Translations under genes and position numbers: made by a program
Source: Lama guanicoe
Lineage: Eukaryota
Assembly (NCBI GenBank): GCA_013239625.1
Contig: MU054117.1
Location: 806,001-870,000 of the forward strand
DNA length: 64,000 bases
Direction of reading: 5' to 3'
In this document: piece after piece, positions 1 through 64,000 of the stretch
Layout of the letters: each line of letters starts with the position of its first letter
How positions within the stretch are numbered: the stretch's first letter is position 1
Notes under the pieces: generated by a model
What the model was told of the DNA's origin: nothing
The model's database searches: none
The model's input: the letters and a program-made list of their open reading frames with translations, nothing else

Positions 1-759
1 CGTGCACCGACTTGAGGTCCTAAGGAAATCAGATCTAAAAGGGTTTTTAGAGATCAGATCACTTAAGGCCTCATTTGAACAGACAATAAAGTGAAAGGGC
101 AGAGAGAAATGACGTCGTATGTGGAGCCCGGGGTGTGTTACTGAGCCTCCCAGTGACTCCGGGGGTGGGCAGATGGCACAGACCCCTTCCCAGAGCCTCG
201 CAGCCAACACGTGGGTGGGGAACCAGGACCGCTGACCAGTGCCCGGGCCCCGGCCCCCACCGTCCAGGCACAGGCCTGGGGCGGCACAGCCAGGCTCGTG
301 GGGTCCTTGACGGAGCCCTGTGCCCACCCTCCTTTGCACCCCCTCCTGCTGACGTGTCATCAAAGTCCCAAGTAGGTCCGGAAACAACGTGAATTAAACT
401 GCTGAACGTTTACTACGATCTGTGCTTTCAAGGACATCTCAGACATGGATCAGACCCACCCCATCTCACTGCATTTCTACAACCACCCAGTTTCCTCTGT
501 TGCCCCAGAATTTCCCTGTCTGACGACAGGTGGAAGCAAGGGCCCCGGCTGGGTCCCGCCCTGTCCCGTTAGAGGCTTCACGAGTGGCTCCTGGGTTGCA
601 CTTTCAAAGAGTGAGGGTTGGTTCAGAAAACCTTTCCCAGAGCCATCTTGTGTTTGTCGTTTCCTTTCGGGTTAGTAAAGGCAATGCTTGGCCCACTGGC
701 GTCCGTCTGAGGAGCCAGGAGCTCTTACCTCTGCTACTGAGAACCTAGATTTGGACAAG

Positions 760-1265
760 TTTTCGTGAAAGTCTCTTGGCAACGTATAAAGAAGCGTCAC
801 CTTTACCCATGAATCCCACCTGGAATTCATCACGGGGAGAAGCATGTGGGGACACAGACGAGCACAGAACGATGCTCTGTGTTGCACACGCCCTGTACTG
901 AGACACGCACGACGAAGGCGTGCCGGGACGGTGGTGAGGTCAGCGTCGGTGATCCCCAGATGAGGAACTGACTGCGCACATCACGGAACCTCCATGTAAC
1001 TCATGCTGCGGGCTCATGCTCAAGGCCACAGGACGGCCACGGTGTGCGACTCGGGGAGAACCAGGGGACGCAGTGCTGTGGGGAGCAGGGTCCTTCCTGT
1101 AAAATCATGTTTCTGCACTTGCATGGTTGACGCTGGAAGGACAACACATAAGAGACCCTGGGGTCCCAGGTCTGGGATTCGGAAGGAATTTTTTCTACTT
1201 TTTAAATCAGTCCTTTAATTTTTCTATTATTATGATGCATAACTTTCGTAATTATAATTTAAAAG
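760..1265 (+). mobile_element. Highly degraded old L1 (L1ME-like) 3' end
   Basis: TTGGCAACGTATAAAG...CCTTTACCCATGAATCCCACCTGGAATTCATC and the terminal T-rich/TAACTTTCGTAATT..AAAAG segment resemble the recalled L1ME 3' end; heavily GC-shifted. Confidence 0.55.
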
Positions 1266-4200
1266 TTACTCCTGAAGTCAAAACAAAGGCTATTACTGAA
1301 ACCTGGAAAACAGAGGACAGCATTCTCCCTATAAAACACGTTGTAACTCACCGCGAGACGAGTTAAACCAAGCTGGGGGGTCGGGTGAGAGCTCGTCTGG
1401 GGGTGCTGGGGGAAGGGGTGGACTCGGTGGAGGAAGGCAGGTGGAGGAGGAGCCCTCTCATTTCTGTGGCCCTGGACGCCCCCTTCCACCTCCAGGGCCC
1501 CCTTGGCGTCCAGCCTCCTGCCCCCCGACACCACACCACTCACTGCCCTCCAGCCCCTCCACCCGCTCCGGCCGCTCTGCCCCAGAGTCACTCCGGCTCC
1601 CCTTCCTCATCCCTCCGGCCTCACCCAGCTTCCGGGGACTCACAGCCGTTTGTGGTCACAGCAGACTGGCTGGAGGGCAGCCGTGGCCCTCGTGGGGTGG
1701 GGGCGTCTCTGGTTTGAAGGAACTTGGGCTCCAGGACTTCCGGAGCAACACAGGGGGTCCTGCTGATGGCTCAGGCCCCCCCGGCCTTGAACAGACGCCC
1801 CGCTCCCCCTTGACACCCGTTGCAGGCAGCCCCTCGCCCCCCATCCTGCAGCCGCATCTGCTCCCGACCCTGTGGCGATGCCCACTTCGCTCAGGTTCTC
1901 TGACCTACTGACTCAGAGGGGTCACTGCTGGTTAACGAGCCCCTTGACAGACACGGACAAGGCTGCAGCAGAAAAAACAACAGAGCTGCTGCTCTCCCAC
2001 CTGACCTGTGGCCGAGCCTGGTCCGGCCTGGTGAGCGCCTGGGGAAGGTCAGCCTGTCCGCAGAGGCTGCAGCGGGTGGCGGGCGGGGAGGGGCGGGGGG
2101 AGGACCAGGCCGTGCCCAGAGGGGAGTCCAGTCTGAGAGCTGGCCTGCATCCTGGGGGAGTGAAGAAGCAGGAGAGTTTGGGAAAGATGGACGGGGCGGC
2201 AGCCAGTGGGGCGGGGCAGAGGCTGAGTCCGAGCTCCGGAGCAGATGGGTGAGAGGAGGGCGCAGCCACGCGGCTTTCAGAGGGGCCAGAGGGCCCCACC
2301 GGCCTCCGCAGCGTCTTCTGTGGGCGCACCGCATGTGGCGCTGCCCGGGAAGAGCCCGTGGCGCCGCAGAGCCCTGCGCGAGTGCTGGCCGTGACGATTA
2401 AAGGCCCAGAGCGTTTGTCGCAGCTCAGCTCTGCTCAGGTGGACGCCGCGCTCCAGACGTTTCACCAAACACCGAGCAGGACGTTGTTGTTTGGGGAAAA
2501 GATTCAGGCGCTTTCACAGAACACTGGGAAATCCAAACAGCGCACAACTGTCCCAGCGTCCGGGAGAAGCACCCTCGCTTGGTGGGGCCGGGGCCTCCCA
2601 TCCCTGGGACCCTCGGGCCCACACCCAGGGGGCCCGTGGGCACTTGGCGCCAGGAGGGCTGGGTCTGGGAAAGCGGGAAGGAAGGGTGCTCCCGTGGCCG
2701 GACCCAAGGGCTTCCTCTGGGCTTGTTCACCCCGGGACGTGCCCCACGAGCAGACCTTGCCGGAGACCGGTCTAGCACCACGGCTCCGACGGCAGGTATC
2801 GCGACCTCAGCTGTGGAAGGGACCTCGCGGCGGGACCGCCTTCCCCCGTGCCCTCCACCCGTGTCCAGCAAAGGGCCCTCAGTGTGCCGTGTGTACTGGG
2901 AGCTCGCGTCATCAGACGGATAGACAGGTGGATGGACGGACAGATGGCTGGTGGAGGATAAGTGAATTCCACAGCATTTCTGGTCTGATCGAGAACAGAC
3001 CACGCTTTCTGTCTTTCAGAGGAAATTTTCTTTCCAGTTTTTTCCTCTTAACGGAGAAAAATCTCCCTGGAACCTCCACCTGCCCTCCGCCCGCTCCTTC
3101 CTCCCCCAACGTCTGCCTGTGGCGGGGGAGGCCGTGCTGTTAGCTCTGAGGCTGATGTGGCCAGGACCACGCACGATGGGAGGGAGGGGCCCAGGGGCCA
3201 GCCCGACTCCCCCGGGTGTGGGATGAGCGCCTTCGGAGGGCAGTGGGTTTCCAGCTAAACATGATGCTTTCTCTCCTGTTTTTCACTCAGCACAAGAGCA
3301 CCCCTTAAGCCCCACCTCCTGGTGACCAGGCCACTCCTGCCTGTCTGTATCACACATCTCCGGGCAGCCAGGCCCTCCGACTCACAAGGGGTTGAAATCC
3401 CAGAGTCACAATATCACAGAGCTGCTAAAATAGGAATCACGTATCTGGGCCCCAGAACACGACAGGGACGAACACGGCTCCTTGAAACACTCCTGCCCCA
3501 TCTGCAACGCAAAAATCAAATGGGCGCAGCCGTGCACGTTCAGACGGCCTACGGTTTACAAAGGGCGCCCTGCGTCTCCTGGAAATCCGCAGTCCGTGCG
3601 GACCAACACCACAGACAGAAAGACAGGTGGGCGGGGCCGGGGTGACGACGCCCGACACGTCTGGTTGTTTTGTTAGGAAATTCTAGACCTTTAAATTGGC
3701 ACGGGGGGCTTTTCACAGCAGCGGCGGGGAAATGGAATTTCTCCCTCCCAGCTTCGACAGCTCTTTCCACTGTTCGCACACTCTTTGCACATGAATGGCC
3801 CCGGGACCAGACCAGCCTTGATTTCGTGTCAGCTGTGCTTTCTGGGGAACGGCACCTGCAGCACCGCCGTGCGCTCTTCTGGGGTTGAAAGTGCTACAGC
3901 TCACTTCACTCTGGATCCGCGCTCTAGGGCTGATGGCGGTTTTCACCTGCGCGGCCTCCTTCGACCCCACGATGCCCTGGCAGGAGGGTGAGCAGGTGTC
4001 CCCACTCTGGGCTGCAGGTGAGACCCTGGTGCCAGAGGACGCGCCCAGAGGGAGGTGGCCCCGCGCCCGTGACGCAGCCGGTCTCTGACCCGGGACCCCC
4101 GTCCTGCGTGCCGTGCGCACGGACACACATCTCGGGGACGGAAGGACCGCGGGGCCTGCTCTCAGGGGACGCGGGGGAGCCAGCGTGGGGTGTGGTGCTG

Positions 4201-14948: not shown

Positions 14949-15020
14949 GGGACCACAGCCCGTCGGGACCACAGTGCGTCGGGGACCACAGCCCGGCGGG
15001 GACCACAGCCCGGCAGGGAC
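14949..15020. repeat. Minisatellite, ~17-bp unit GGGACCACAGCCCGGCG x ~4
   Basis: Four direct copies of GGGACCACAG with 16-17 bp period read directly. Confidence 0.9.
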
Positions 15021-17056: not shown

Positions 17057-19020
17057 AAAACGTCACCAAGCCTGAATAGCTGGCTGTGCACTTCAGAAAG
17101 TGCTTGCCCACCTCCAGTGGGCAGCAGGGAACGCCACCATCTGCGAGGTTCTCCTTGGACTTTTGACTTTGATCCCTGACAAAAGCCCCCCCCCGTGCCC
17201 CCAGAACAGGCCCTGGGCAGGCAGGCCGCAACCTCTCTTTGCACAAGCACGATGGCAGCAGGTTGAGAACAAAGAGCAGGAAAAATGTCAGACAAAGGCA
17301 AGGTCTGGGTAACGGGGAGCAGTGGAAGGGCACGGAGGGGGCCGGAGCGCACAAGTGATCTCGCTGCAGCTTTGCCTGGAGTGACACCAGCTCTGCTGCA
17401 GAGCAGAGTCCTCTGTAGAAGAGCTGGGTCAACTCCCTGGGGTCAGGACGAACCTGGAGAGGGTTCCAGAGAACAGGGCTCCTGGGTTCCAAGAGCTGCT
17501 CAAGGGGCCAGCACAGGCTGGGGAAGGAACGGGGTCCCCCCGTCTCAGCCACACCTTCCTGAGCCAGTCTGACCACGTGCTCTTTGGGGAGGGCGACACA
17601 GGAGCCCTGGTTTGCGGCATCTGCCGATTTCCGTGGTGTAAACGCTGTCACCAGCGCCCACTTGGAACTATCGGTCTGATGACGCTGGACGCAGAGGTCA
17701 GAGGCCCGGGTTCTGTCGGCTCTCGTGAGCCTTCCAACCCCTTGGTCCGAGGCAGGGAGTTCCTGTTAGGTAAACGCGGTGTTTCTAGGGCGGGGACACG
17801 GTCTGAGACACTGCTGCCTGCCCTCGGTGGCCCCTGCTCCACCCACAGGCCGTCCTGCCCAGTCCCCTCTCACCGCAGGGAGGGCAGCAGAGGAAGGAGA
17901 GGGAACCCCCGGGCCAGGCCACCGGGTGACTCCCAGGAAGGTGCTGGGGAGGGGCCTGGAGGCACTGAGAAAAACGAAGTTGGAGTATCACCAGCCAAAG
18001 TTACTCATCCTGGCCCCTGGGGTAGCAGGCGTTGGCTGCAGCCTCACAGGGAGCAAGGGTGATGGACAGAGTGGCCTGGGGCCAGGACATCCGTCTGGTC
18101 CGGGGGCCCACCAGTCGGAACCCGAACAAAGCAAGACCCCACGGAGACCGAGGCCCAAGTTACGGTAAATCACGGATGCGATAATCACTTACATGTGGAC
18201 GTGTCCTACGGGGGACACACGCTTTCACAAATCCCTCCCCAGCCCTGCGCTGTTGTTTTTTTTCTTTTTGATCCCGGGAGGAAGACGGGTACAGGCAGTT
18301 CTTCCCCTAAAAAGCTGAGGGTGCAGGAGTGGGTGCCGTGCGCGGTGGGGAGCTGTCCCATGGCAGCCCCTCGCCCCGTCCCCTCGCCCCGGCACCCCCT
18401 TTCCGGAGCTCTTATTCATCCCGTCTTGGCAGCTGCCTCTTGTGTAACTGAAACCTCAAGAAACTTTTTGTTTGGCTTTATAGTCAGAAGAAATTCCAGT
18501 AACTTGGTTCCCGCTACTCAAAAAAAAAAATTCCCAGCCCGGCTCTGGAGAACTCAGCTCCCCGCCCCCCAGCACAGACTGGTCCCTGAGAGCAGGCTCC
18601 TCCCGCCCCACCCGACTCTGTGCGGGGCCTGGCCCCTCATGCTGCGGCCTGGCGGGCCCGGGGCTGAGGGCAGGGTGAGGCGGGCAACGCGGGCCTGCTC
18701 CGTGGCTGCAGCCAAGAGAGTTAAGGGCTGTTGAAAGGTCTGCTTGGCTGGTCTCCCTCTCACCGGGGTTCGCTGCTCACTTTTGTTTCTGGCCGGCAGG
18801 ACGGGGAGCCTGTGGTGAGGCCCGCTGTCCGCGCACCGGAGACCGTGCCCAGGCCCCCTCCCCGGGCCTCTAACCAGGATCTGCCCGCGTCCTGACCTGC
18901 TGCCTGCCCGCCTGGGCCGGCAAGTGACCGCTGTTGAGTCAGGAAGACGGCCTTGACTCCGTGTGTCCTGAACCCTCTCCTTCAAGTGGGGCCACCGGGA
19001 AGCTTGTTTAAGCAGCAGCA

Positions 19021-19721
19021 AAGGCGGCCTGCCTGCACTGCTGGTGGGAGTGTAAACTGATGCAGCCACCATGGAAAGCAGTGCGGGGGGCTCCCTGAAC
19101 GCTGAACCAGAGCCACCCTGTGACCCAGCAGTCCCACTCCTGGGCACGTAATGGAGGAAACTAATTCGAAAAGTTACGCACACCCCGATGTTCACAGCAG
19201 CACCATTTGCAGCAGCCAAGACGTGGAAACAACCTAAGTGTCCATCGGCAGACGACCGGATAAAGCAGCTGTGCAGTGGAGTACTACTCAGCCACGAAAC
19301 GGAACAGAACAACGCCATTTACAGCAACGGGGATGGGCCTAGAGATGATCACACTAAGTGAAGTAGGTCAGACAGAGAAAGAAAAATCTCACATGACACC
19401 ACTCACTTGTGGAATCTAAAATATGATACAAACAAACGTTTACGAGATGGAAGGAAACTCACAGGCATAGAAAACAGCCGTGTGGTCACCAAAGGGCAAG
19501 TGGGGAGGAGGGGTAAGTTAGGAGCGTGGGAGGAACAGACACCAACAACAATAAACAAAACAGACAGACAAGGTCCGACTGCACAGCTCAGGGAGCCGTG
19601 CTCGGGGCCCTGCGACAACCTGCAGTTTCTCGCAAGAGCTCTGCCTCTTCAGGAAAGAATCTGAAGCTGTGCCCCTGAAACTAACAGAATGCTGTGAACC
19701 AACTACAGCTGAGTAAGAAAG
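19021..19721 (+). mobile_element. L1 3' end (ORF2 C-terminus + 3' UTR), 5'-truncated
   Basis: CACTGCTGGTGGGAGTGTAAAC, GACCCAGCAGTCCCACTCCTGGGC, ATGTTCACAGCAGCA, CTAAGTGAAGTAGGTCAGACAGAGAAAG and TGTGGAATCTAAAA are hallmark L1 motifs; alignable to the 26.2-27.0 kb copy. Confidence 0.95.
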
Positions 19722-19759
19722 AGGTCAACTAAAAGGAAGAGGATTTGGGGGAAGGCAGC

Positions 19760-19866
19760 CCCCTGGGCCCCCCTCCTGAGGAACTGAATCAGAAACCGCA
19801 CTTTAACAGGACCCCCCACCGGTTCAGGGGGCAAGCTGAGCCCGCACGAAGCTGGAGGGACACTAG
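19760..19866. mobile_element. MER5-like fragment
   Basis: CTGAATCAGAAACCGCACTTTAACAGGACCCCC matches the MER5 internal motif. Confidence 0.65.
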
Positions 19867-20194
19867 TGAGAGGTGCCCTGGTGACGCTGCTGGCTGCCTG
19901 CGGCGTGCCGGCGGGACCCGCTCCAGCGGGCGCACGAGCCCCGCACGCACACAGACGGTCCCCGTGGGTGGCCGTGGGCGTTGTGCGCAGGCCCGCGGAG
20001 GTGATCGCTCTCATCGTCCCAAGTCAACCTCGTGACACCCGAAGTCCCCCCGCCTGCATTTCCAGCAGAGCCTTAGCTGACAGTTTGCTACCCAGACCCT
20101 CGCCGCCCCTCTTCTCCTCCATCCCCTCCCACCAGGAAGCCACCTTGTCCGCCTCCCGTGCAGCTGTAACCAGCTGACTGAATCCTGGCCACTC

Positions 20195-20340
20195 AACAGT
20201 TTCCAGACGCACGGACGCACCCTGGGAGCTCGGTCCAAATGCAGAATTCCAGGCTCCACCCCAGACCTACAGTACTCAGATCTGTCTTAAGATCCTCAGT
20301 GACACTTTTGCATATTAAATTCAGGAAGTGTTATCCTAGG
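20195..20340. mobile_element. MER5-like fragment
   Basis: CCTGGGAGCTCGGTCCAAATGCAGAATTCCAGGCTCCACCCCAGACCTAC. Confidence 0.75.
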
Positions 20341-20603
20341 GGCTCCTGGGAAAGTCTCTTTCCTGTTAAAGGGACAGAGTTGCTGCCACCATGCCTGCCT
20401 CATCCCCCTGCCTTGAATGTAAGTATGATGCCAGGGTCGGCATCAGCCATCCACAAGAATGAAAAAGTGAGTGAGCACAAGCAGGCTGGGGATGAGGATG
20501 CAAAAGTGACAAAGAGTCTGGGTCCTCAGTGGCACCCTGAGCTGCTGGACCAGACTTCCTAAGTGTCCTGTTACTGGAAGCTGAAAACATTGCTAATTAA
20601 CAC
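20341..20603 (+). mobile_element. Old MLT1 (J/K-like) LTR fragment
   Basis: CTGCCTTGAATGT..ATGATGCC...CAGCCATC...CTGGGTCCTCAGTGGCACCCTGAGCTGCTGGACCAG...CTGTTACTGGAAGCTGAAAACATTGCTAATTAACAC. Confidence 0.65.
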
Positions 20604-21344: not shown

Positions 21345-21642
21345 GGTGCGTACACACAGGGCGCTTCTCAGGAGTATGAAGGGATGGGGTCCGTGAGGTC
21401 ACACGGATGCCCAGTGGCAGCGTCGTGCTGCACTGAAAGAAGCCGGACTCAAAAGGCTACGTACTGAGCGATCATTTATATCATATTCTGGAAAAAGCAA
21501 AGCCATGGGGGTGGAAACCGGAGCGGCGGTCACCAGGAGCAGGGAGGGAGGAGCAACTGCAGAGGATGCTTCTGGGCACGAGGGAACACTTTCGTCTTGA
21601 TGGTGATTGTGGTTATATGATTACACAAATTTGACAAAGTTC
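21345..21642 (+). mobile_element. L1M (MB/MC-like) 3' end fragment
   Basis: AAAAGAAGCCGGACTCAAAAGGCTACGTACTG...CATTTATATCATATTCTGGAAAAAGCAAA...TCTTGATGGTGATTGTGGTTATATGATTACAC. Confidence 0.8.
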
Positions 21643-23041: not shown

Positions 23042-23550
23042 TTAGCGGCAGGGACGTTGCTGCTGCCATCACAACTGTCCTGCACGTGGCCAGGAAGTTT
23101 AGCAAAGACATGAAAGACGTTTAAAAGACCCCAGAAGTCATAGAGAGGAAAACTACAACGTCTGATTTAAAAAACACACTGGGTAGGATTAACGTCAGAT
23201 TTTATGTGGCAAAAAAAAAAAAAGAGTAAACTTGAAGCCCTAGTAATAGAAACGACCGAAAATGAAAGACAGATTTAAAAAATGAAATGAAACATGAAGT
23301 GCAAGGAGAACTTCAAATAATTTAATACACAGAGTCCCCACAGGAGCAGGGAGCGTGGAGACACAGAAACGTACAGAGTGAAGAGCTAACACTTCACCAA
23401 GTTTAATTTTTAAAGCACAAACCCCCAGTCCAAGAAGCTCAATGAACAGTAAGCATAAGAAATACGGAAAGAAGCTTCCACACCAAGGCATCCCATAGCC
23501 AACTGCTCAAAGCCCGTGAGAGAGAGGAAACAGCAGAAGCTGCCAGAGTC

Positions 23551-23695
23551 GGGGGGAGGGTGCAGCGCAGCGTGGAGCACGCGCTTGGCGTGCGCCAGCC
23601 GTGCACTTGGTGTGCACGAGGTCCTGGGTTCCATCCCCAGTCCCTCTGTTAAAAAACAAACAAACCTAATTACCTCCCCCCCAAAAAAGAAAAAA
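23551..23695 (+). mobile_element. Camelid tRNA-derived SINE (Vic-1-like), GC-shifted head with internal duplication
   Basis: GGGGAGGG...GCACGAGGTCCTGGGTTCCATCCCCAGT (B box)...AAACCTAATTACCTCCCCCCC plus A-tail. Confidence 0.9.
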
Positions 23696-26137
23696 GCTCT
23701 TAAAAATGAGTATTATTTTCCCAAAAGGAGGCAGGAAAAGAAGAAACAACGAACATACGGATTAACAGGAAGCAGCAGCGAGATGACTGACTCAAGCCCG
23801 ACCACACGTCCACGATCGCCTTCGACGCGCACGACGTCAACACCCCGACCAGAAGCCGGGGCCCGTCAGGCTGGGCTTGGGAGCAAGACCCAGCTACCTG
23901 CTGCTTACGAGAAGCCCGTCTTAAACATAAAGACAGACGCGGGTCAAAGGCGGAAAGCTGGAGAAGATACACGACACCGACACGGGTCCAGAGCAGCCGG
24001 AGCAGCCGTGTCAACGGCAGGCCGAGCAGAGCTCAGCGCGAAAACAAGCACCGGAGAAAAGGAGGCTTTCCCTAACGACAGGGACCGGTCCTTCCGGAGC
24101 TCGTGGCCCCACTAACATCCACGCAGCTTTAAAAAGGTTTTAAATGAAGTGGTTGATTTATGCACCTTTTACAGAGCTTCAAAATACACAAAGCTGAGAG
24201 TGTTCTCGGTGGAAGCTGGCAAGCTGATTCTAAAATTCACACAGAAACGCAGAAGACCTGGGACGGCCCGAACAACTCTGATGAGAGAAGAACAGAGCTG
24301 CAGGGGTGGCTGCCACCCCTGATTGCAAGACAGTGTCGAGCTGCAGCAACCAAAACGGCGTGCTCTCGGCGTGCAGACAGACCAGTGGGCCCACAGGACA
24401 GGAGAGGGCACCAGAAACAGGCCCACGCGCAGGCGGAGGCTGACTTCTGACTCAGTGAGAGCGGAGACAAGCCGCGGAGCGGGACAGGGCATTTGCAAAG
24501 CGCGTGTCTGGTGAAGAACCAGCGTCCGAAGCACTGCTGAAGCGCAGGGCTAGGAGAGCAGCCCCCTGCAGAATGGGCCCAAGCCACGAGCAGATGCTCC
24601 CCTGCAGGGACAGAGCTGCTGGGGTCCAGCCCGGGCGGCGCGGCGTGGCGAGGATGGGCAGCGGCCTTGCCGGAGGCCCGGAGGCAGCCAGGTGTCCCTG
24701 CACACGGGCAGCCTCTGCTCCCATCTCACACCAGCCAGCCCCCCTTTTGGAAGGAAAATAACACAGACCCGGGCTCCCGTCCCAGACCTACTGCCCACCA
24801 GCTGCATCTGCTCAGACCCTGCCTCCCACGGCCCAGGGCCTCAGCTTTCTCGCTGAATAAGGAAGTCACTGGGCTCAAGGACCTCAGAGATCCCTTCTGG
24901 CTCCACAGCGCTTATTTCTGGAGTGTTCACGATGACAACTCTCTCCTGAGAGGGCCTGCCCATGACCGCATCGCAGGGAGGGTCTGAGCACCTCACTGTC
25001 CAAGGGGCCGGCTCCCCTGCCGTCTCACCGTCTACAGTGCCGGCTTCCTCTCCCCAGCCCAAGCTTCCATGGCAACACGGTAGCTCCTTTCCCCTCCCGG
25101 CCTGACCGGAGAGAAGGGCCGCTGGGCAGAGGGACTGAGACAGCCGGCTTCCCATGGGCAGCGCGGAGGGCTGGTGGTTCTGCGGGCAGAGGGACGTCAG
25201 GTGGGGTTCTCTCGTTTAGTGGATAAGAGCCCTGTGAGTGGGCGCAGGCGCCTGAAAGCAGACGGAGGTGGCAGGTCAAGGGTGGGAACTGGGATGCGGG
25301 GGCTTGGAGCTGGGATGGAGCAGGTGGGGTGCTGCCGGTGGGGTGCAGGAGAGGGTGGGGGGATGGGGGAAGCCGGGGCAGGAGCATCCAGGCTGCCGGC
25401 CCACAGGACAGTCGTGGGGGCATGAACCTTCCAGGAGGGCACGGCCTGCAAGACACCCCCGCCTCGGGTCCTGGTGAGGAGCCAGGCACGAAGACAGGGT
25501 TAGGGTTAGCTGCCCAGGCGCCCTGTCCCCTGCCCCCGGCACACAGAAACTGATACCAACTGGGGAGGGCAGAGAAAAATTGGGTTTGCTGGGCTCGCAC
25601 TGCTGATGACGGCTGGCCAGCAGGACCGCGGCTACATACCGAAAGCACCACAGCAGCTAATTTTCCACCAGATCAAAATAAATCAGAGAACAAAACCATT
25701 CTGACAGCAGAGGAATGTGGCAATGTGTTAAGAGGTAATTACAGCCTTTTCCTCCTTGTTTCACCCGCGTTTCTGCTGCCGCTGGTGCAGGAACTGAATC
25801 GCAGCTGTCACTCCCTGTCAAGAGGCCCGAGCAGGCTGAAGGAACCGAGCCGGGGCCGCAGAGCAGCCAGCATCCTGGTTGCCTGGGGAGCGGCGCCTTC
25901 TGACAGAGACATCAGTCCCACGCCTGACGCCGGGCGGCCAGGGAGCCGCTTCCCTTCCCAGCCGGGGGCCTCTGTGCCAGCCAGCTCACCATCTGCGGCT
26001 CCCTGAAAGCAAACCCATCCTCTTGCTCCGGACAGGCCGCACCCCGCTCTGTGCCGGCCTTGGGATCCGACAGACCGGGCCGATCTCCAGACCCGCCAGC
26101 TCCCAGTGAGGTGGTCTAGGAAACATCCTGGAAATCT

Positions 26138-26219
26138 ACGGCCTCGGTTTCCCTTCTTGGAAAGGGGGACGTGAACGCCTACCTCGTGCAGTCGTGAGAA
26201 TTAGAAACCGCGCGTGTAA
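26138..26219 (+). mobile_element. MIR 5' part (interrupted by L1; continues ~27049-27100)
   Basis: GGCCTCGGTTTCCCTTCTTGGAAAGGGG...CCTACCTCGTGCAGTCGTGAGAATTAG is MIR core. Confidence 0.75.
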
Positions 26220-27048
26220 TCACTAATCAACAGAGAAACGCAAATCAAAAGTGCAGCGAAGTACCACCTCACACCTGTCAGAACTGCGACCACCAAAAAA
26301 ACACAAATGACAAACGCCAGCAAGGGCGTGGAGGCGAGGGAGCCCTCCTGCACGTCTTGGGGGGGGTGCAAGCTGGTGCAGCCGCTGATGCAGAAAACAG
26401 TACGGAGTTTCCTCAAAAGCTAAAAATAGAACTCCCATATGATCCAGCAATTCCACTCCTGGGTATGTATCCAAAGAAAACAGAAACATTTATTTGGAAA
26501 GATACATGCACCCCAATGTTCACAGCAGCACTATTTACAACAGCCAAGACATGGAAGCAACCTACGTGTCCATTGACAGATGACTAGATAAAGAAGATGT
26601 GGTCTATTTATACAGTGGAATACTACTCGGCCATAAAAAAGAATGAAATAATGCCATTGGCAGCAACATGGATGGACCTAGAGATGATCATACTAAGTGA
26701 AGTAAGTCAGGCAGAGAAAGACAAATGTCATATTTATCACTCATATGTGGAATCTAACAAATAAAACAAATGAGTATAACAAAACAAAAACAGCTCACAG
26801 ATGCAGAGAACAAACTCTAGTTACTGGCGGGGGCAGGGAAGGGGGAGGGACTACGACACAAACGACTCTGTGTCAGCAGATGAGCTGCGAGGACAAGCCA
26901 CATCGTACAGCACAGGGAATTGTACCTGCTCTTTTGTAAGAACTTTAAGCGGAGCCTAACCTATAAAATGGTAAATCACTGCACCATATCCCTGGAACTA
27001 ATATAATCTCACAAATCAACTGCACGTCACTGAAAAGAAAAAGAGAGA
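26220..27048 (+). mobile_element. L1 3' end (ORF2 C-terminus + 3' UTR + A-rich tail), 5'-truncated
   Basis: ORF 26357-26587 reads KLKIELPYDPAIPLLGMYPK..DTCTPMFTAALFTTAKTWKQP, the classic L1 ORF2 C-terminus; 3' UTR and tail follow. Confidence 0.97.
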
Positions 27049-30000
27049 GAGTCATGCACGTGACAGCCGGCACCTGGCCAGGGCCGCCGTGTTCATCCTG
27101 ACTGTGACCACAGCCTTCTCAAGTCTGAAGCGACGTCACCCACGGCTCCTGCGGACCCTCTGACAGCAACCCGGTGAGGACGTGGGGCCTCTGGTGGCTG
27201 GGCTGTCTTGGGACCCTCTCAACGAGGCGAAGCCTCTTCCAGAGCAAGCCTCCTCCTGTTGCCTGAAGGGACGCTCGGCTTGGAAGAATCAGCAGCTACT
27301 TCACAGCTGAATGAATGAGGCGAACAGGAGCCGTTCTCATGAAACTGCTTGGGAGGGCCCCGGTGGACCCCCGGGCTCCTCAGGGCCCTGGGAGACGGCT
27401 GCTGGGTGTCAGAAGTGGGGGACGGGAGGCAGGCCTGCTGCTGTGAGGGACGGAGCAGCACGTCCTCCTCCGCACCGACCTACCCAAGCCCGGGCCCGTG
27501 TGAGGCCAGGCTCCGCGTGAAACCACTGCTTGCACTGGACGGGACCCTTGGGTCAATGGCAGTGCTGCCCAGGGCCAAGGGCAGGGCCTGCATACAGGGA
27601 TGTAGGCGCTGATGCTCAGGGAAGCAGGCCCCTTGCCACATGCCCACCTCTGGCCCGACCAGACCCAGCCTATGCCGTGAACGCCCACCCAGAGCGTCCC
27701 CCGCACAGCCACGCTGGGCACCTGATGCCCAGCCAGCTGGCGGCACCACCAGGCCTCGAACTCAGGCTGGCTCGGGGACCGAGGGTCGTGGCCTGGCGGG
27801 GGGTCGGGGGCCTCTCTGAGGGCCTCTCCCAAGGGTTTCTGTTCTATGCCAAAAGGGGACATACCAGCTCCAGAGCTGCGCCTTGGACTTCAAACTACAG
27901 GCGTTTTGTCCATTTGGGAGAGAACTCGGGAAGAGAAATGAGAGCAGAGGAAAATTTGCTTTTCACCCAAATCGGCATCAGAAGCCTGAACTGAGTTCCA
28001 CGTGCCGCCTGCCTGGGCCCTTCCAGCTGGCCACCTCACAGGGTCGCAGATGACAGAGGCCAAGCAGTGTCCCGTGAGATGCCGCGTCCCCACGGGTTCT
28101 CAGGGTTCTGGGAAGCAGGCCACTTGGCACCCGGCGCCCGGCCCCACCCCTGTCATCCTCACCTCGCCTGTACCCCATGCAGCCAGGGCCTGGCCAGGGA
28201 CGGCGATGACCAGCTGGCCCCTGGGAGCAGTCTGACCAGTGTGGCCTCAGGAGGGCCGGCACGGTCAGCCCTCAGCCAGAAGGACAGCGCTGACTGCCCG
28301 GCTCTGGCTGGGTGGCAGGGCAGGTCCCACAGCACAGACGGACCACGTCCTTGAGGGAGCTTGCGGCCTCGCTGGAGAGCTCAGGCTGCTCAGTGAGTGT
28401 GCCGAGGGCTCCGGGCGTCACCGTGTCCGTAAAGCACGGGGTCTGCACACGGGGGCTGCCCCGTCCCTGCCCGCAGAGAGCCGACCTTCACCGAGGAAGG
28501 AGGCGTTTGATTCTGCCACGGTTTGTGCAAGCTGGGCGGGCCAGTCTCGGGGATGGGATGATCCGACAGCAGGTGACCTCTTAACAGATGCCCTTCTCAG
28601 GAAGGGCCTCTCAGAGCTGAACTAGGCCGACGTGGCAAGCAGGCTCTTGTCCCCTGCTGACACCCCCGCCCTCCCGGGCCCACGCCTGGAGGCCGAGCCC
28701 TCAACAGTGTCTCCCAGGCGCCCCTGCCCTCCAGCTTCCTGTCGGTCTGGTGGATGAGGAAGGAAAGAGAAGCCAGGGCCCTCTGTCCACGCCCACCTGG
28801 TGTGGTCCCCAGGCCTGGCGGTGGCCGCAGCCCTGCGAGACCAGCTGAGGCCCAAGGTCCCTCCCCCCAGCTCCAGCAACCACTGGGCCCCGGGAACACT
28901 ACCTCGTCCCATTAGAAGGTGGTGACAGCCCCCCCGTCACTGGCCCTTGGGCCCCAACAGCCCCGCTGTCCCCTTATCCCGCTGGACACACGCCCTCCCG
29001 TGAGGCCCTTTCAGCGGAACCATCCGTGTAGAATTCCATTTCCCACTGCGATGCCCATTCTTCACAATCGAGGAAGGTTTATAGAGAAAACAGCGCTTCT
29101 GTGGTTGGAAGTCAAGTCCTGGGCTCCACCGTGTTGTGTCCAAACCTGTCCTTGACAGACAACCACCGAATGCCCCCATGACAGCCCGTTTCCACCGCCT
29201 GCAGGGCTGCACGTGGCCCTGAATCCAGGCCCCAGGGCCGCTGACTCCTGCCCCCACCCTGGGCGGGCACCTTGCTCTCCACCAGCAGAGGGGCGCCGCT
29301 CCTTGGGCACGCGTGTGGAGAGAGAGCAGAGCTCAGGCAGGCCTGGCCCTGCTGACCTCCGTCAGCCAGCCTACGAGTCTGCGCTAACCCCTTCCTCTGC
29401 CTGGCTCCGGGACCCCACTCCCTCCCGGCCACCACGGACTGTCCTCTGCACGTGAGGTCACTGCCCACAGCCCCCCCGTCCCCGCACAGATGAGGGCTCC
29501 TTGTCACCGTCAGTGTTTCGACCGAGTGCAAGTACTTAACCCTCTGCCCGTGACATTCCGTCCCCGCCCCCGCCAGGACAGGACAGCGGGCACAGAGCAG
29601 GGCGCCCCGAGGCCTGTGAGCCCAGAGCCGTGGTGGCCTTCACGCCCACTCGGGGAAGGAACACTGGCCGAGGGAAGGAACCAGGTGACCCGGGACAGGG
29701 AGGGCCGGCTCTCCCTCTCCCCCGCCCCTCCTGGAACTGGCACATCCTCGGCAGATGGTGATTCTAGCCCCGTCTCCCTGGGAAACCCGCCCCAGCGCTG
29801 AGCAGCCTCCAGGCCGGTGAGGGCTGGCCAGGCTCCAGCTTGACACCAGGTGCTCCCGCCCCAGGCCCCCCCAGGCCCCCCAAGGCCGGGCGCTTACAGG
29901 AGACCTCACAGGGACCCGCACGGGAGGGTGGACGCCACCAGCCCTGTCACTCCCTCCCGGGAGCCCCTGGCCTCCCACTGACCAGTCTGGGTCCCCACCC

Positions 30001-35480: not shown

Positions 35481-36165
35481 TCGAAGCTACCTTTCCTGGC
35501 ATCTCCACGGCCCCTGACGTTTTTATTTTTCTTTCCAGATGGAAAAGAAAAAAACAAAGAAGGAAATACTGAGCTACCTGGCTTCCCGCAGGCTCAGGTG
35601 AAGCACGTGTAGGGAGGAGGCGCCCTGGTGGGTAATCACGCTCTGTCACTGGTGTCTCTCCATGACCCTCACTGAGTTGGGGGATTTAAAAGCACCCACA
35701 AGTTGATTTACATTGAATTCATGGCATTATTTTATTAATCCAGCTCTCAAATCTACTTTTTCAAAGGGCTTTTTGTCTCTTTACCTCTACTCTGAAGACT
35801 TAAAAAGTCGTTTCAATGGAACAAAACTAAATAGAATTTGAAAACAAAACAAAACATGGTGACTTCCTCTTAATTAGATGGCGCTTAGGCATCTGCAACA
35901 ATAAGTAAGATGGAAAAAATTCAGTCTCTTAAAAACATGAACCCCGTGGAATTGAGATGGAGGAGACTAGAGTGATGGCTGGCCGTCGGGAGGAGGCAGC
36001 CTGCACCAGTGGAGATGGGCTGGGGCTAGACCCGGACCCACACGAGGCCCAGGACCACGTGGAAAAATCTCTTAATTTCTAGGGACCTCAAGTTCCAAGT
36101 ACCTAAGATGAAGATATGGTGTCTTCCTCAAAAGATGATCATGATAGAATTAAAATTATTTGCTT

Positions 36166-36302
36166 GGGGGGAGGCCAAGTGGTAGCTCAGTGGTAGAGCG
36201 CGTGCTTAGCGTGCACGAGGTCCTGGTCCCATCCCCAGTACCTCCATTAAACAAACTAATTAGTTAATAAACCAATTACCTGCCCCTCCCTGCAAAAAAA
36301 AA
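36166..36302 (+). mobile_element. Camelid tRNA-derived SINE (Vic-1-like)
   Basis: TAGCTCAGTGGTAGAGCGCGTGCTTAGCGTGCACGAGGTCCTGG..CATCCCCAGTACCTCCATTAA...AATTACC plus A-tail; A box intact, B box damaged. Confidence 0.93.
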
Positions 36303-36539
36303 TACTAATTTTTAAAAACCTCAAAGCTCACTGGTTTTATCCACATCATTTTTTTTAAAAGGACTTGAGAGTTTTCAAATCCCGTAACTTAAAAAAAAAA
36401 AAACTTGAAGCAGAAGTAACAACTGTCTAAAATCGATGAGTAAGATGTAAGTAAACATGCAGGACAGCAGCGTTCTCCTGACCGGTCAGAAACGCCGGCC
36501 TAAGCTTCCTGGCAGTTACGCGAAGGAAGTTATGATAAA

Positions 36540-40609: not shown

Positions 40610-40857
40610 NNNNNNNNNNNNNNNNNNNNNNNNNNNNNNNNNNNNNNNNNNNNNNNNNNNNNNNNNNNNNNNNNNNNNNNNNNNNNNNNNNNNNNNNNNN
40701 NNNNNNNNNNNNNNNNNNNNNNNNNNNNNNNNNNNNNNNNNNNNNNNNNNNNNNNNNNNNNNNNNNNNNNNNNNNNNNNNNNNNNNNNNNNNNNNNNNNN
40801 NNNNNNNNNNNNNNNNNNNNNNNNNNNNNNNNNNNNNNNNNNNNNNNNNNNNNNNNN
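40610..40857. other. Assembly gap (N run)
   Basis: N bases; the left flank is C-rich low-complexity sequence. Confidence 1.
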
Positions 40858-43030: not shown

Positions 43031-43379
43031 TGCTGTGGCCTGAATGTGTGTACCCCCAAACCGCTGACATGACGGTCCCTGGAGATGCCGCCGTGGGAGG
43101 GGACTAGGTGTAGATGAATCAGGAGGGGCTGCTGGTGGGATCAGTGACCTTGAAAGCCGAGGAGGAGACACCGCAGCACCCGTCTCTCCGCACATGTGCA
43201 CCAGGAGAGGCCGTGTGTGCACAGCGATGGGGCGGGGGGTGGGCGTCCACATGCCAGGAACCAAGGCCACCGACTCCTTGTACTTGGACGTCCAGCCTCC
43301 AGACCATGGGAGACACAGGTCTGGGGGTTAAGCCCCAGCCAACAGTGTCTCGTTACCGCAGCCTGAGTGGGCCGAGGCG
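43031..43379 (+). mobile_element. MLT1A-like solo LTR
   Basis: TGCTGTGGCCTGAATGTGTGTACCCCCAAA...TGGGATCAGTGACCTT...CTTGGACGTCCAGCCTCCAGACCATGGGA...TTAAGCC...GTTACCGCAGCCTGAG. Confidence 0.88.
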
Positions 43380-43484
43380 CTGGGCCGGGCAGAGACCTGC
43401 CGCTCAGTTACTGAATACGACGTGCGAGCTAAGCCTGCCCACGGACCTGTGTTCTGCCCAGCTTCCCCTCAACAGAAGAACCAC

Positions 43485-48172: not shown

Positions 48173-48305
48173 TGTGTTTGTGTGCGTGCACGTGTGCGTG
48201 TGTGCGTGCATGCATGCCCACGCACACGTGCACACACACACATGGACAGGTCCATGCACACAGAGACGTGCACACACGTGCACAGACAGGTCCACACACG
48301 CATGC
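48173..48305. repeat. Degenerate (TG)n/(CA)n alternating purine-pyrimidine tract containing an inverted repeat
   Basis: Read directly; a 15-bp perfect inverted repeat at 48186-48200 / 48219-48233. Confidence 0.9.
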
Positions 48306-56728: not shown

Positions 56729-56886
56729 NNNNNNNNNNNNNNNNNNNNNNNNNNNNNNNNNNNNNNNNNNNNNNNNNNNNNNNNNNNNNNNNNNNNNNNN
56801 NNNNNNNNNNNNNNNNNNNNNNNNNNNNNNNNNNNNNNNNNNNNNNNNNNNNNNNNNNNNNNNNNNNNNNNNNNNNNNNNNNNNNN
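56729..56886. other. Assembly gap (N run)
   Basis: N bases. Confidence 1.
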
Positions 56887-58408: not shown

Positions 58409-58427
58409 GGGGGGGGGGGGGGGGGGG
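58409..58427. repeat. Poly-G run (19 G)
   Basis: Read directly. Confidence 0.95.
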
Positions 58428-59628: not shown

Positions 59629-59808
59629 GTGTCCCTGCATGTCCCTGCGTGTGTCTGCGTGTCTCTGCATGTCTCTGCATGCTCCTGTGTGTCCCTGCAA
59701 GTCCCTGCTTGTCCCTGCGTGTCCTTACGAGTCCCTGTGTGTCCCTGCATGCTCCTGTGTGTCCCTGCGAGTCCCTGCATGCTCCTGCGTGCTCCTGTGT
59801 GTCACTGC
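59629..59808. repeat. 10-bp minisatellite RTGTCCCTGY x 18
   Basis: Exact 10-bp period over 180 bp with variant units. Confidence 0.95.
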
Positions 59809-60500: not shown

Positions 60501-60507
60501 TTAGACG

Positions 60508-60903
60508 TTTTCGTTGTGGCAGCACACACACACATTCGCCGTCCCGGCCACCTCTAGGTGCGCAGGTCAGAGACGCCGAGCACTCGCACTGCCGGCAGCC
60601 AGCCCCGCCACCGCCTCTCCAGGGCTCACCCCCCGCCCCCACGGGCAGCACCTCCTCGCTCCCCCTCCCCCAGCCCCTGGCGCCCTCCGCTCTGCTCTCT
60701 GCGTCCACGGGCTGGACGTTCTCGCGTTTGTCTCTGTCTCTGGCTTATTTCACTGAGAGCATCGTGACCTCAAGGTCCATCCACGTGGCAGCAGGTGACA
60801 GAACCCCCTCCTCTTGCACGCACGGGCCACGCTGTGTCAGCCCGCCGTCCAGGACGCTTGGTTTGCTTCCATTTTTGCTGCTGTGAACACGGGTGCACAA
60901 AAG
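60508..60903 (-). mobile_element. L1MB-like 3' end, extremely GC-shifted with internal deletions
   Basis: CCCCTCCCCCAGCCCTGGC, CTGGCTTATTTCACTGAG, CCTCAAGGTCCATCCACGTGGCAGCAGGTGACAGAA and GCTGCTGTGAACACGGGTGCACAAA are L1MB landmarks in order. Confidence 0.88.
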
Positions 60904-62119
60904 CTTTTTTTTAAACACCTAAACTTCACTCCTGTCATTTACGTCAGCAGCCGGTGCTACTGCGGATTAACGTCAGGACCCGTCTTCCACTGGCCCCGGC
61001 CTGGAGCATGGCGAACTCTGCCCGGGGTCTGCAAGTTTGCCTCTGTCTTCAAACCAGCGGTTCAGCCTGGCCGGACCCTGGAATCGCCCAGGGGCATTTC
61101 ATAAAGGACACCGGCGTCCAGCCCCAGCCTCCGCGCCGAGGCAGAGGAAGCGGTACGCCGCGAAACGCGTCTGCAGGGGCACAGTCGTTCCCCTAGACTC
61201 TCCTCACGGGGGCCTTCCCTTTATTTACAAGGTGTCTGTCCGTGGGTAACTTCTCTCTTTTCTCCCATCAAGAACAAAAAGGCTTTGACAACCGGTCAGT
61301 TAGCCCAGTAGCTGGGCTGATTACATCTCAACCGAGAAACACCCGCTCCAGGCCGCACCTCCTGGGTCTCAGCCTCTCTTCTCACTGTGCACCGAGAGCC
61401 TGCTCCGTTCCTGGAAGGAGCCGACCTGAGGGAGCAGGTGGGGAGGCACTTCCAGGCCCACGCAGTCTCGAGGGCGTCATCACTGAGTCCTCCTGGACGG
61501 CGGGGCCAGGAAGGGCTCCAGGACTCCCTGGAGGAGACAGAGGGCGGGTCCGCCCTGCGCTCCTCCACCCTGACGCCCTGGCTCTTGCCCGCGACTCCCA
61601 GGACAGACAGGTGTAGTGTCCCCACCAGCAGTGAACAGAGTCAGTCACACGGCCTCCTTGCGGGGAAGGTGTCACCACAGTACTTTCGTGCCACATGAAT
61701 GTGCCACCTTTTACAAACACACAGATGAAAAGGCAAAGCGACTGCTCAGGAGCTGACCCCTGGGCGAGCCGGCGGGAGGAAGGGGGCCGTGTCCACCTGG
61801 CCCGACCGCTGGGGTGTCACTGGGGCCTGGCTCCTGAGAACAGTCCAGGGCGGCGTGGGGGCCACGAGGGCTCCGACCACTGTGCACCCTCGCGAGGCGC
61901 CCCTCCCTGGAGGCGACATGTGACAGTGACTGTGATGCAGGGTCTCAGAGCCCCTCCTCCCAGGGGAGGCGGAGGCACCCTCGAGGGCCCCGGCCTGCCT
62001 GCCCCTTCCTGCGGCCAGAGCGGGGCCCCACAGCTCCGAGCCCCGGGTTCCTGCTCTGCAGTCAATCTCACAAGGTGAGTGTGAGGGTAAAGAATGGCCA
62101 GACAGAGCAGCAGCTGCCG

Positions 62120-62653: not shown

Positions 62654-62692
62654 ATTGGCGTTGCCATGACAACGAGCCGTTGCCAGGGAGCC
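62654..62692. promoter_or_regulatory. RFX X-box pair with adjacent ATTGG
   Basis: GTTGCCATGACAAC at 62660-62673 (one mismatch to the palindromic consensus); weaker GTTGCCAGGGAGCC at 62679-62692. Confidence 0.6.
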
Positions 62693-64000
62693 GCCAACTA
62701 GGAGAGTGAGAATCAGCGAGGCCTAAAAATAAAGCCGCTATGTCTCCAAGTCCGCGTGTAACAGGCCGCGAGCTCGCCGCCTCCCCCCCAGCGGCCCCCA
62801 CCGCTGCTCCGGCCCCGAGCCGCTCAGACGGGCGGCAGAGGGCCGCGGGGAGGGGCCAGGCGGGACGCTGCTGTCCAGAGGCCAGGAGCAAGCCGCACCG
62901 GTGGGCCGCCTCGCAGAGCCTGAGGGCACCTCCTTCCCTCTGGGAGGTGCCTGGTCCAGCGCCAACCTCCACTGCACGTGGAAGCAGGGGCCACCCTAAG
63001 CCGTCGGAATTTGCCAGAATTTGCCCAGCCCCTTGGCTCTGGGAGAACCGTCTCCCTCGGACCACTTTCCTCTTGGAAAACATCACCGAGGCCCAAGCCC
63101 CAGAGGCATCTGTGGGAGCAGGAGCCCCGATCGAGCAGCGTGTGTGGCTCATGGCTCCTTTCACGACTGATACTGGCAGGGCCGTCGTGGGCCTGGCTCC
63201 AAGAAGGAAGGTACCCTAACACTGAAAATCGTGGGGAAATCGTAAACATCCCCAAGGGGCAGGCGAGGGTCTTCCCGGCTGGTTCTGGCACCGCAGGGGA
63301 ACGCCTGGGTCCGCCCGTCTCCCCCGCCAGCCTCGACTCCCCACGAAGGCAGCGATCCCGCTAACTCACCCCATAACCTCAGCGTCCACACCACCCCAGA
63401 CACACCGTCTGCACACGGCAGAGGGCATGTCCTGGGCGAACGGAGAGACGTCAGCAGTAGCAGCCTCTGACCAGGACAAAACCTCGCTCTCTCCAGATTC
63501 TAAGCTCTGCACCCGGAGAGCCAAGCCCTATCCCTGCCCAGGCCTCTGTGCTCAAGAAGTGGTTTATCAGTTGTACCGGGGCATCATGCCTTGAGCAGAT
63601 CAGATCAATTAAAACCCAGAACTTCGTGGGCAATAATTTCCCTGACGAGCAATCGTAACAGGGTTTTGTCGAATGTAGACCTGCCCGATTTCTTCCGAGT
63701 CTGACTTGTTTAATTCAGATAGTGCGTGGTCCTCGGAATCTGTGCTTTGCATGAAGCTGCAGCAGCCTGGCTCCTGGCTTCCCTCCTCACGGCCACGCTC
63801 ACCCTGGAGATCTCCCCCGACCATGGCTAACGTGTGCTCAGCACACGCAAACAGCGGCGAATCTTCCTGTCAGCGAAAGAAGTCCGTCCTCGAGAAACGA
63901 GAGCGCGTATCTTGCTCACCATCACCCCGTACAAAGAAGTAACCCATCTCTTGGTTCTTCGGCTGTCCTGGATTATCCAGCCACTAATCCAAATGCCGGC

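What the first reader, a model, noticed from the sequence alone, without database searches (positions are those of the whole stretch)
1..64000. Window-wide AT-to-GC rewriting of fossil repeats, with CpG gain
Seen: L1, MIR, MER5, MLT1 and SINE remnants are recognisable by motif order, but their differences are overwhelmingly A>G and T>C, often creating CpG. For example, the MLT1A terminus recalled as ACTAAGACA reads GCCGAGGCG at 43371-43379. Established: neutral mammalian repeats normally drift toward AT and lose CpG, whereas GC-biased gene conversion (gBGC) in high-recombination, often subtelomeric, regions reverses this. Inference: this locus has experienced unusually intense gBGC. The mechanism is known; what stands out is its strength here.
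Basis: partly seen in the sequence, partly recalled or inferred. Interest (0 to 1): 0.75.

Follow-up and report, generated by a model that had tools for sequence, protein, structure and literature searches.

The report
GC-rich region rewriting old repeats
A 64-kb stretch of a camelid genome with no gene found in it is very rich in G, C and CpG, and its older L1 remnants changed from A/T to G/C about three times as often as the reverse, which is the ordinary footprint of GC-biased gene conversion and not a new mechanism.

Summary
Observation partly confirmed. The window is 61.8% GC with CpG o/e 0.59. Of its 200-bp bins, 84% are at least 55% GC, and 59% of the window lies in CpG-island-grade 500-bp windows. 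No exon, RNA gene or telomere repeat was found.

Only three repeats could be tested with tools, all L1 3' ends. I polarised them against 35 natural L1 ORF2 fragments or against each other:
- Copy B: 20 W>S vs 4 S>W.
- Copy C: 25 vs 10.
- A 150-bp cluster at the 5' edge of copy A: 14 vs 5.
- The rest of copy A: 7 vs 5.

The bias is about 3:1 (GC* 0.68-0.76), not 'overwhelming'. Transitions and transversions share it. CpG creation is no more frequent than chance.

This fits gBGC, a known process. MIR, MER5, MLT1 and the 'L1 endonuclease' piece remain identified by eye only. The scan noted similar GC-rewritten L1s elsewhere in this genome.

The parts
1..64000 (.). GC- and CpG-rich plateau: 61.8% GC, CpG o/e 0.59, broken by a few low-GC islands
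   Evidence: 84% of 200-bp bins have GC >=0.55 and 59% of the window is in CpG-island-grade 500-bp windows. No Rfam family, no tRNA, no Pfam domain in the 10 longest ORFs and no codon-periodic exon.
19022..19714 (+). L1 3' end, copy B: older and GC-shifted (GC 0.515 over the aligned part)
   Evidence: nhmmer E=5e-48 to copy A and tblastn to L1 ORF2 fragments down to 3e-12. 20 W>S, 4 S>W and 3 other at 149 sites, GC* 0.76. 21, 4 and 3 at 162 sites with 30 references.
26150..27050 (+). L1 3' end, copy A: younger, GC 0.43 over the aligned part
   Evidence: Residues translated from 26588-26761 match human L1 ORF2p residues 1220-1269, E=6e-13. 35 L1 ORF2 fragments were found with 26198-26584 as query.
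26270..26419 (+). Cluster of W>S changes and three frameshifts at the 5' edge of copy A, next to the GC-rich flank
   Evidence: 84 sites with 14 W>S, 5 S>W and 2 other. The W>S rate is 14/46 against 7/105 downstream, p=2.4e-4. The frame path is seen in the HSPs. GC is 0.61-0.70 in 60-100-bp bins.
26420..26761 (+). Little-changed ORF2 C-terminal coding part of copy A (GC 0.30-0.43 per 100 bp)
   Evidence: 168 sites with 7 W>S, 5 S>W and 0 other. There is one stop and no frameshift. GC per 100 bp is.
60725..60901 (-). L1 3' end, copy C: the most GC-shifted (GC 0.62). It may run from about 60520 to 60950
   Evidence: nhmmer E=3.7e-6 and tblastn E=0.008. 115 columns, identity 0.61, with 25 W>S, 10 S>W and 10 other, GC* 0.68. 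The rest of the alignment is unreliable.
36160..36310 (+). Young tRNA-derived SINE inside the low-GC island 34.2-36.6 kb. A second, partial copy lies at 23580-23704
   Evidence: Sequence read. The pair was found by blastn and nhmmer E=2.5e-9. ARAGORN calls no tRNA. The family name is recalled, not tested.
43040..43380 (+).
Evidence: The letters are confirmed. No library was available and there is no paralogue in the window.
23516..24511 (+).
   Evidence: No L1 match in PDB at E<=1 or E<=10, nor in Pfam at E<=1. The resemblance is by motif order from recall only (translations).
40610..40857 (.). Assembly gap (N)
   Evidence: The flanks do not overlap. Not filled.
56729..56886 (.). Assembly gap (N)
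   Evidence: The flanks do not overlap. Not filled.

Best explanation
The window is a GC-rich, isochore-like stretch with no exon detected. Its substitution process favours fixation of G/C over A/T, most probably through GC-biased gene conversion during meiotic recombination.

AT-rich retroelements that land in it are gradually pulled from about 40% GC towards an equilibrium near 65-75%. The oldest L1 remnant already matches the background (62%). An intermediate one is at about 50%. The youngest is still about 40%, except for its edge next to the GC-rich flank. CpG rises only as a by-product of the GC rise.

Shown: the composition, the direction of change in three L1 remnants, and the sub-kb contrast inside one of them. 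Inferred: that recombination is the cause, and the time-averaged strength (B of about 1-1.6).
For: - Composition.
- Protein-anchored polarised counts: B 20:4, the A 5' cluster 14:5, and the rest of A 7:5. They hold after dropping 5 references with bacterial labels: 21:4, 11:5 and 6:5.
- In the uncorrected per-reference counts, W>S exceeds S>W for copy B with 27 of the 27 references that align to it, out of 35.
- Copy C within its nhmmer-supported block: 25:10. In the same block B is 9:4 and A is 3:6.
- DNA pair A/B: 123 columns have A weak and B strong, 69 the reverse and 43 other, out of 235 differences in 639 columns.
- GC rises with divergence: A 0.41, B 0.48, C 0.62.
- The bias is the same for transitions (43:14) and transversions (19:6).
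- The W>S rate differs 4.6-fold across about 26420 within one L1 fragment while S>W does not.
- The same method gives no bias in the young part, so it does not create the bias.
- 19 sequencing runs with four organism labels, from 8 studies, hold 0.74-0.86 of the words of 19001-25000, so this stretch is not a one-off assembly product.
- Literature: the stationary GC content averages 0.37 in human and rises with crossover rate and towards telomeres (PMC2346554: abstract and passages read).
Against: - Only three repeat remnants, all L1 3' ends, could be polarised. They give about 400 protein-anchored sites plus 115 columns, so 'window-wide' rests on composition.
- The reference states are majority votes of decayed L1 copies from other species, not a true ancestor.
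- A random alignment of an AT-rich ancestor to GC-rich DNA would itself give about 2:1 (80:38 in shuffles), and copy C is only 61% identical.
- In the badly aligned 3'UTR part, three-way parsimony gives A 7:21 and B 7:22. Over all 357 columns B is 20:26.
- The A 5' cluster alone is not significant against 1:1 (p=0.06, or 0.21 with 30 references). It coincides with three frameshifts, so an older or otherwise damaged segment is not excluded.
- No recombination, polymorphism or orthologue data were available.
Confidence: 0.7

Rival explanations
1. A regional mutation bias or low germline methylation, with no fixation bias. The domain would mutate more often from A/T to G/C, for example through transcription-associated A>G change, or would lose fewer CpGs because it is unmethylated in the germline.
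For: CpG o/e is 0.59 throughout. There is a strand asymmetry, with A>T in 31 of 32 2-kb bins, that suggests germline transcription of the minus strand. The young SINE at 36160-36310 keeps several CpGs.
Against: Low methylation preserves CpG but does not turn A/T into G/C. The bias is equal in transitions and transversions (43:14 and 19:6), which a single mutational process would not be expected to give. The W>S rate changes 4.6-fold within less than 200 bp of one L1 fragment. W>S changes land in CpG no more often than chance.
Confidence: 0.15
2. An ancient, stable GC-rich isochore shared by many mammals, now at or past its peak. The rewriting of the old L1s would be old, and little is happening today.
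For: GC* from the old copies (0.68-0.76) is close to the present GC (0.62). The least diverged L1 part shows 7:5, GC* 0.46. The low-GC islands coincide with the identified young insertions.
Against: With 12 changes, the 7:5 count cannot separate GC* 0.4 from 0.7 (my inference from the counts). The W>S cluster at 26270-26419 sits in a fragment whose remainder is only 7% diverged at the scored sites. If the fragment is one insertion, the process was active after that insertion.
Confidence: 0.1
3. An artefact: repeats recognised by eye in GC-rich DNA, or weak alignments, make composition look like directional change. Alternatively, the stretch is misassembled.
For: Shuffled columns give 80:38. 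The unreliable part of the three-way alignment gives composition-driven counts. My first count was inflated by wrong-frame alignments. The heavily shifted 'L1' stretch at 23516-24511 has no tool-supported L1 match.
Against: Copies A and B are secure L1 homologues (E=6e-13; E=5e-48). The frame-corrected, protein-anchored counts keep the bias in B and show none in the young part of A. Nineteen runs from 8 studies hold 19001-25000.
Confidence: 0.05

Closest known systems
gBGC-driven GC-rich regions of mammals (high stationary GC near telomeres and in crossover-rich DNA; Duret & Arndt 2008, PMC2346554, abstract and passages read)
   Same: W>S substitutions exceed S>W. The stationary GC content lies far above the genome-typical 0.37 reported for human. 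Both transitions and transversions are affected, and old retroelements serve as the neutral markers.
   Different: The recombination rate, the distance to the telomere and the lineage on which the changes fell are unknown here. The estimate rests on three L1 remnants, not on megabases of aligned sequence.
GC* peaks at PRDM9-independent, CpG-island-like hotspots in placental mammals (Joseph et al. 2023, bioRxiv 10.1101/2023.11.17.567540, abstract and two passages read)
   Same: There is sub-kb to kb-scale heterogeneity of W>S change (the edge at about 26420), and most of the window has CpG-island-grade composition.
   Different: The window is a 64-kb plateau and not an isolated peak: 84% of bins are at least 55% GC and the maximum is 75%. 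No camelid is named in the paper's main text. Its species list is in supplements I could not open.
Runaway GC regions of gerbils (Pracana et al. 2020, PMC7403616, abstract read)
   Same: Both are large regions with a W>S rate above the S>W rate. In the copy A 5' cluster, substitutions of several kinds and indels are raised together.
   Different: The gerbil regions were defined on coding genes and have all substitution classes strongly raised. Here no exon was found, S>W is not significantly raised (5/38 vs 5/63), and GC does not exceed 75% in any 200-bp bin.

Membership tests
gBGC-shaped GC-rich region | W>S substitutions exceed S>W in neutral markers, so that GC* is well above the ancestral GC of the markers | tested here: met
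   B 20:4 (GC* 0.76), the A 5' cluster 14:5 (0.70) and C 25:10 (0.68). Ancestral GC of the scored sites is about 0.40.
gBGC-shaped GC-rich region | The bias follows the weak/strong class and so holds for transitions and transversions alike | tested here: met
   Copy C, all 230 columns: transitions 43:14 and transversions 19:6. Copy B, uncorrected: 17:6 and 5:1. Numbers are small, and part of the C alignment is weak.
gBGC-shaped GC-rich region | Changes are clustered on the scale of conversion tracts or hotspots (sub-kb to a few kb) | tested here: inconclusive
   The W>S rate is 14/46 against 7/105 on either side of about 26420 in one L1 fragment, p=2.4e-4. However, three frameshifts coincide with the cluster, and a composite origin of the fragment is not excluded.
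gBGC-shaped GC-rich region | W>S derived alleles segregate at higher frequency than S>W alleles | not testable with these tools
gBGC-shaped GC-rich region | High meiotic recombination rate, often near a chromosome end | not testable with these tools
There is no map and no chromosome position. No (TTAGGG)2 is present in the window.
Promoter-type CpG island | GC >=0.55 and CpG o/e >=0.65 over >=500 bp | tested here: met
   34 merged intervals covering 59% of the window.
Promoter-type CpG island | Association with a transcription start or first exon, and a germline-unmethylated state | tested here: inconclusive
   No exon or domain was found. Methylation is not testable. Sequence of this grade covering 59% of 64 kb is not what single promoters give.
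L1 (LINE-1) 3' end remnants | Significant similarity to the ORF2 C-terminal region or the 3' end of L1 | tested here: met
   A: E=6e-13 to human ORF2p. B: E=5e-48 to A and 3e-12 to ORF2 fragments. C: E=3.7e-6.
MIR, MER5, MLT1 and other named fossil repeats | Significant alignment to the family consensus | not testable with these tools
   No Dfam/Repbase library was available, and consensus sequences from memory may not be typed. Self-comparison finds no paralogues.

The most novel reading that the evidence does not exclude
This camelid genome may carry unusually many and unusually strong W>S-rewritten tracts. The evidence would be this 64-kb plateau plus the sharply bounded GC peaks inside L1s that the scan noted on other pieces. 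That would point to long-lived, PRDM9-independent recombination hotspots, or a gerbil-like runaway of GC, in Camelidae. The edge at about 26420 inside a little-diverged L1 would then mark a hotspot border that has been active within the camelid lineage.
Probability: 0.15. Interest if true: 0.5.

Novelty: new member of a known kind. Interest (0 to 1): 0.22.

Why it matters
If the reading holds, the window is one more example of how recombination-linked fixation bias erases the identity of old transposable elements and produces CpG-island-like sequence without any promoter function. This matters in practice for annotating camelid genomes: spurious CpG islands, spurious long ORFs, under-masked repeats and gaps in GC-rich DNA. 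It also matters for tests of selection near such regions. It does not change what is known about the mechanism. Only a genome-wide, lineage-polarised comparison could show whether camelids are unusual.

Tried and rejected
- Genes and RNAs. There was no Rfam family at gathering score and no tRNA. The 10 longest ORFs had no Pfam domain. Five of them, checked, have equal GC at all three codon positions, so they are chance ORFs. No codon-periodic open stretch reached GC3-GC2 >=0.5. Five weak ones appeared at >=0.38, none convincing.
- Telomere repeats: none.
- Dispersed repeats. Self-blastn found only the L1 pair, one SINE pair and internal minisatellite hits. Profile searches added only copy C and a marginal hit at 21480-21557 with E=0.047.
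- The GC-shifted 'L1 endonuclease' ORF and two neighbouring pieces gave no L1 match in PDB or Pfam. I therefore did not spend a large protein search on them.
- First polarised count. I rejected it in part because wrong-frame HSPs inflated the divergence of the copy A 5' part (42 of 122 sites, 8 'other'). On that basis I briefly read copy A as an old/young chimera. The frame-corrected count removed the excess of 'other' changes (2 of 84). The chimera reading is no longer favoured, but it is not excluded.
- Upstream continuation of copy A into the GC-rich 25.8-26.1 kb. There is only one weak collinear match, at 26149-26211 with E=1.2. Not used.
- Three-way parsimony outside the nhmmer block was rejected as composition-driven.
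- Literature. No paper on gBGC, PRDM9 or isochores in camelids turned up in searches (listings seen).
- Two further homologous-protein searches, which would have extended the L1 references upstream, were not run. The verdict would not have changed.

Full report
WHAT IS THERE

The window has 63,594 read bases and two N gaps, at 40610-40857 and 56729-56886. It is 61.8% GC, and every 2-kb bin lies between 0.51 and 0.68. CpG o/e is 0.59 overall and 0.47-0.79 per 2-kb bin. TpG and CpA stand at 1.21 and 1.20.

At 200-bp resolution the mean GC is 0.619 with sd 0.078. The binomial expectation for the sd is 0.034. Of the 316 bins, 84% are at least 0.55, only one reaches 0.75, and 13 are below 0.45. This is a plateau with a few low-GC islands, not a chain of peaks. 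59% of the window lies in 500-bp windows that meet GC >=0.55 and o/e >=0.65.

I found no Rfam family, no tRNA, no telomere repeat and no Pfam domain in the ten longest ORFs. Five of those ORFs, checked, have equal GC at all codon positions. No codon-periodic exon candidate was found. The stretch therefore looks non-coding.

Nineteen sequencing runs under four coded organism labels, from eight studies, hold 0.74-0.86 of the sampled words of 19001-25000. At least that part is not a one-off assembly product.

The gaps: their flanks do not overlap and have similar composition. Whether the sequence is continuous across them is unknown, and this finding does not depend on it.

I did not test it further.

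WHICH REPEATS COULD BE TESTED

The letters GCCGAGGCG at 43371-43379 are as stated.

Self-comparison finds very few paralogues. Three L1 3' ends are secure:
- Copy A, 26150-27050 (+). Its translated 26588-26761 matches human ORF2p residues 1220-1269 at E=6e-13.
- Copy B, 19022-19714 (+), E=5e-48 to copy A.
- Copy C, 60725-60901 (-), E=3.7e-6.

Its motif order does resemble L1 ORF2 as I recall it, but that is a lead, not a test.

POLARISED COUNTS

One protein search with 26198-26584 returned 35 natural L1 ORF2 C-terminal fragments from horse, pig, camel, hyena and others. Five carry bacterial labels.

The method was as follows. For each aligned codon I used only the positions whose base is fixed by the reference amino acid. 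I took the majority of at least 3 references with at least 75% agreement as the earlier state. At each place I chose the reading frame with the best local identity.

Results:
- Copy B: 149 sites, 20 W>S, 4 S>W, 3 other; GC* 0.76; p=0.0015 against 1:1.
- Copy A, 26270-26419: 84 sites, 14, 5 and 2.
- Copy A from 26420 on: 168 sites, 7, 5 and 0.

Dropping the five bacterially labelled references gives 21:4, 11:5 and 6:5.

An earlier version without frame choice overstated the divergence of the copy A 5' part. I report it only as a rejected step.

For copy C I used A and B as the reference where they agree. Within the nhmmer-supported block there are 115 columns at identity 0.61, with 25 W>S, 10 S>W and 10 other, GC* 0.68 and p=0.017. 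In the same block B has 9:4 private changes and A has 3:6.

At the DNA level, A and B differ at 235 of 639 aligned columns. In 123 of them A is weak and B strong, in 69 the reverse, and 43 are other. GC over the three-way alignment is A 0.41, B 0.48, C 0.62.

RESULTS AGAINST THE READING, AND LIMITS

- Over all 357 three-way columns, B shows 20 W>S vs 26 S>W and A shows 12 vs 28.
- In the poorly aligned 3'UTR part the counts are A 7:21, B 7:22 and C 32:8. This is what composition alone produces when a GC-rich sequence is laid on two AT-rich ones.
- Shuffling the columns gives 80:38. Weak alignments therefore exaggerate the bias, and I rely on the protein-anchored counts and the supported block.
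- The young part of copy A shows no bias (7:5). With 12 changes this cannot separate a neutral from a GC-biased regime.
- 'Overwhelmingly A>G and T>C' is too strong. These two types are 43 of 103 private changes in C and 17 of 32 in B. W>S of all kinds makes up about 60-74% of changes.
- CpG is not preferentially created. 18 of 62, 3 of 22 and 6 of 25 W>S changes now lie in a CpG, at or below the roughly 0.3 expected from base frequencies.

HOW IT MOST LIKELY WORKS

Four observations bear on the mechanism:
- The direction of change is towards G/C.
- The bias is equal in transitions (43:14) and transversions (19:6).
- GC rises with divergence from A to B to C.
- The W>S rate jumps 4.6-fold within one L1 fragment (14/46 vs 7/105, p=2.4e-4) while S>W does not differ (5/38 vs 5/63, p=0.50).

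These are what a fixation bias on the weak/strong class predicts when it acts in short tracts, and that is GC-biased gene conversion.

From GC* 0.68-0.76, or the present GC of 0.62 if the region is at equilibrium, set against a neutral GC* of about 0.37-0.40, the standard relation GC*/(1-GC*) = (mutation ratio) x e^B gives a time-averaged B of roughly 1-1.6. This is my inference and it is rough.

Such values fit recombination-rich, often telomere-near DNA of other mammals. In human the stationary GC averages 0.37 and rises with crossover rate and towards telomeres (PMC2346554, abstract and passages). They do not stand outside what is known.

The W>S cluster in copy A coincides with three frameshifts. 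Recombination-associated damage, or a composite origin of the fragment, could explain that. I cannot tell which.

RIVALS

Germline hypomethylation or a mutation bias would explain the high CpG and perhaps the strand skew, but not the class-wide bias or the sub-kb contrast. An old isochore that is no longer being driven is not excluded. If copy A is one insertion, however, its 5' cluster arose after an insertion whose remainder is only 7% diverged at the scored sites (12 of 168). An artefact is unlikely for copies A and B.

COMPARISON WITH WHAT IS KNOWN

The case belongs with these three:
- gBGC-shaped GC-rich regions (PMC2346554).
- The GC* peaks at CpG-island-like, PRDM9-independent hotspots reported for most placental mammals (10.1101/2023.11.17.567540, abstract and two passages). 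No camelid is named in that main text, and the supplements are closed.
- More distantly, the gerbil runaway-GC regions (PMC7403616, abstract).

My four searches for camelid work on gBGC, PRDM9 or isochores listed nothing relevant. That covers only the held library.

The scan's own earlier notes list many 'L1 rewritten into a GC peak' observations on other pieces of this genome, and one follow-up that judged the process known. These are unchecked leads, not support.

VERDICT

The window is a real GC- and CpG-rich stretch in which ageing L1s are pulled towards G/C at about 3:1. The mechanism is most probably gBGC, of a known kind.

Noticed in passing
window 1-64000: The + strand has A>T in 31 of 32 2-kb bins (overall AT skew +0.098) and C>G in 20 of 32 (GC skew -0.027). 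This is the asymmetry expected, from recall of work on transcription-associated mutation, if the minus strand is the sense strand of a unit transcribed in the germline. No exon was found.
   Followed up: partly
window 26290-26420: Three frameshifts lie in the same 130 bases as the W>S cluster of L1 copy A. There are none in the next 340 coding bases. Substitutions and indels are raised together there.
   Followed up: partly
proteins P0005, P0008, P0009, P0012, P0019: Five L1 ORF2 fragments are filed under bacterial species names, on contigs of 284-530 bases. They are presumably mammalian contamination in bacterial assemblies. I did not look at the contigs.
   Followed up: no
window 59629-59808; 22953-23041; 14949-15020: GC-rich minisatellites: a 10-bp unit x18, a 17-bp unit x5.1 and a 17-bp unit x4.3.
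   Followed up: no
window 34200-36600: This is the largest low-GC island. It contains a young tRNA-derived SINE (36160-36310) that still holds several CpGs, plus A-rich tracts. It looks like a cluster of younger insertions not yet pulled towards the background GC.
   Followed up: partly
window 48179-48240: A 62-base stretch matches its own reverse complement at 84%, within a CA/CG-rich tandem region (22-bp unit at 48259-48300).
   Followed up: no
window 21480-21557: There is a marginal fourth match to the L1 3' end profile (E=0.047) inside a low-GC island.
   Followed up: no
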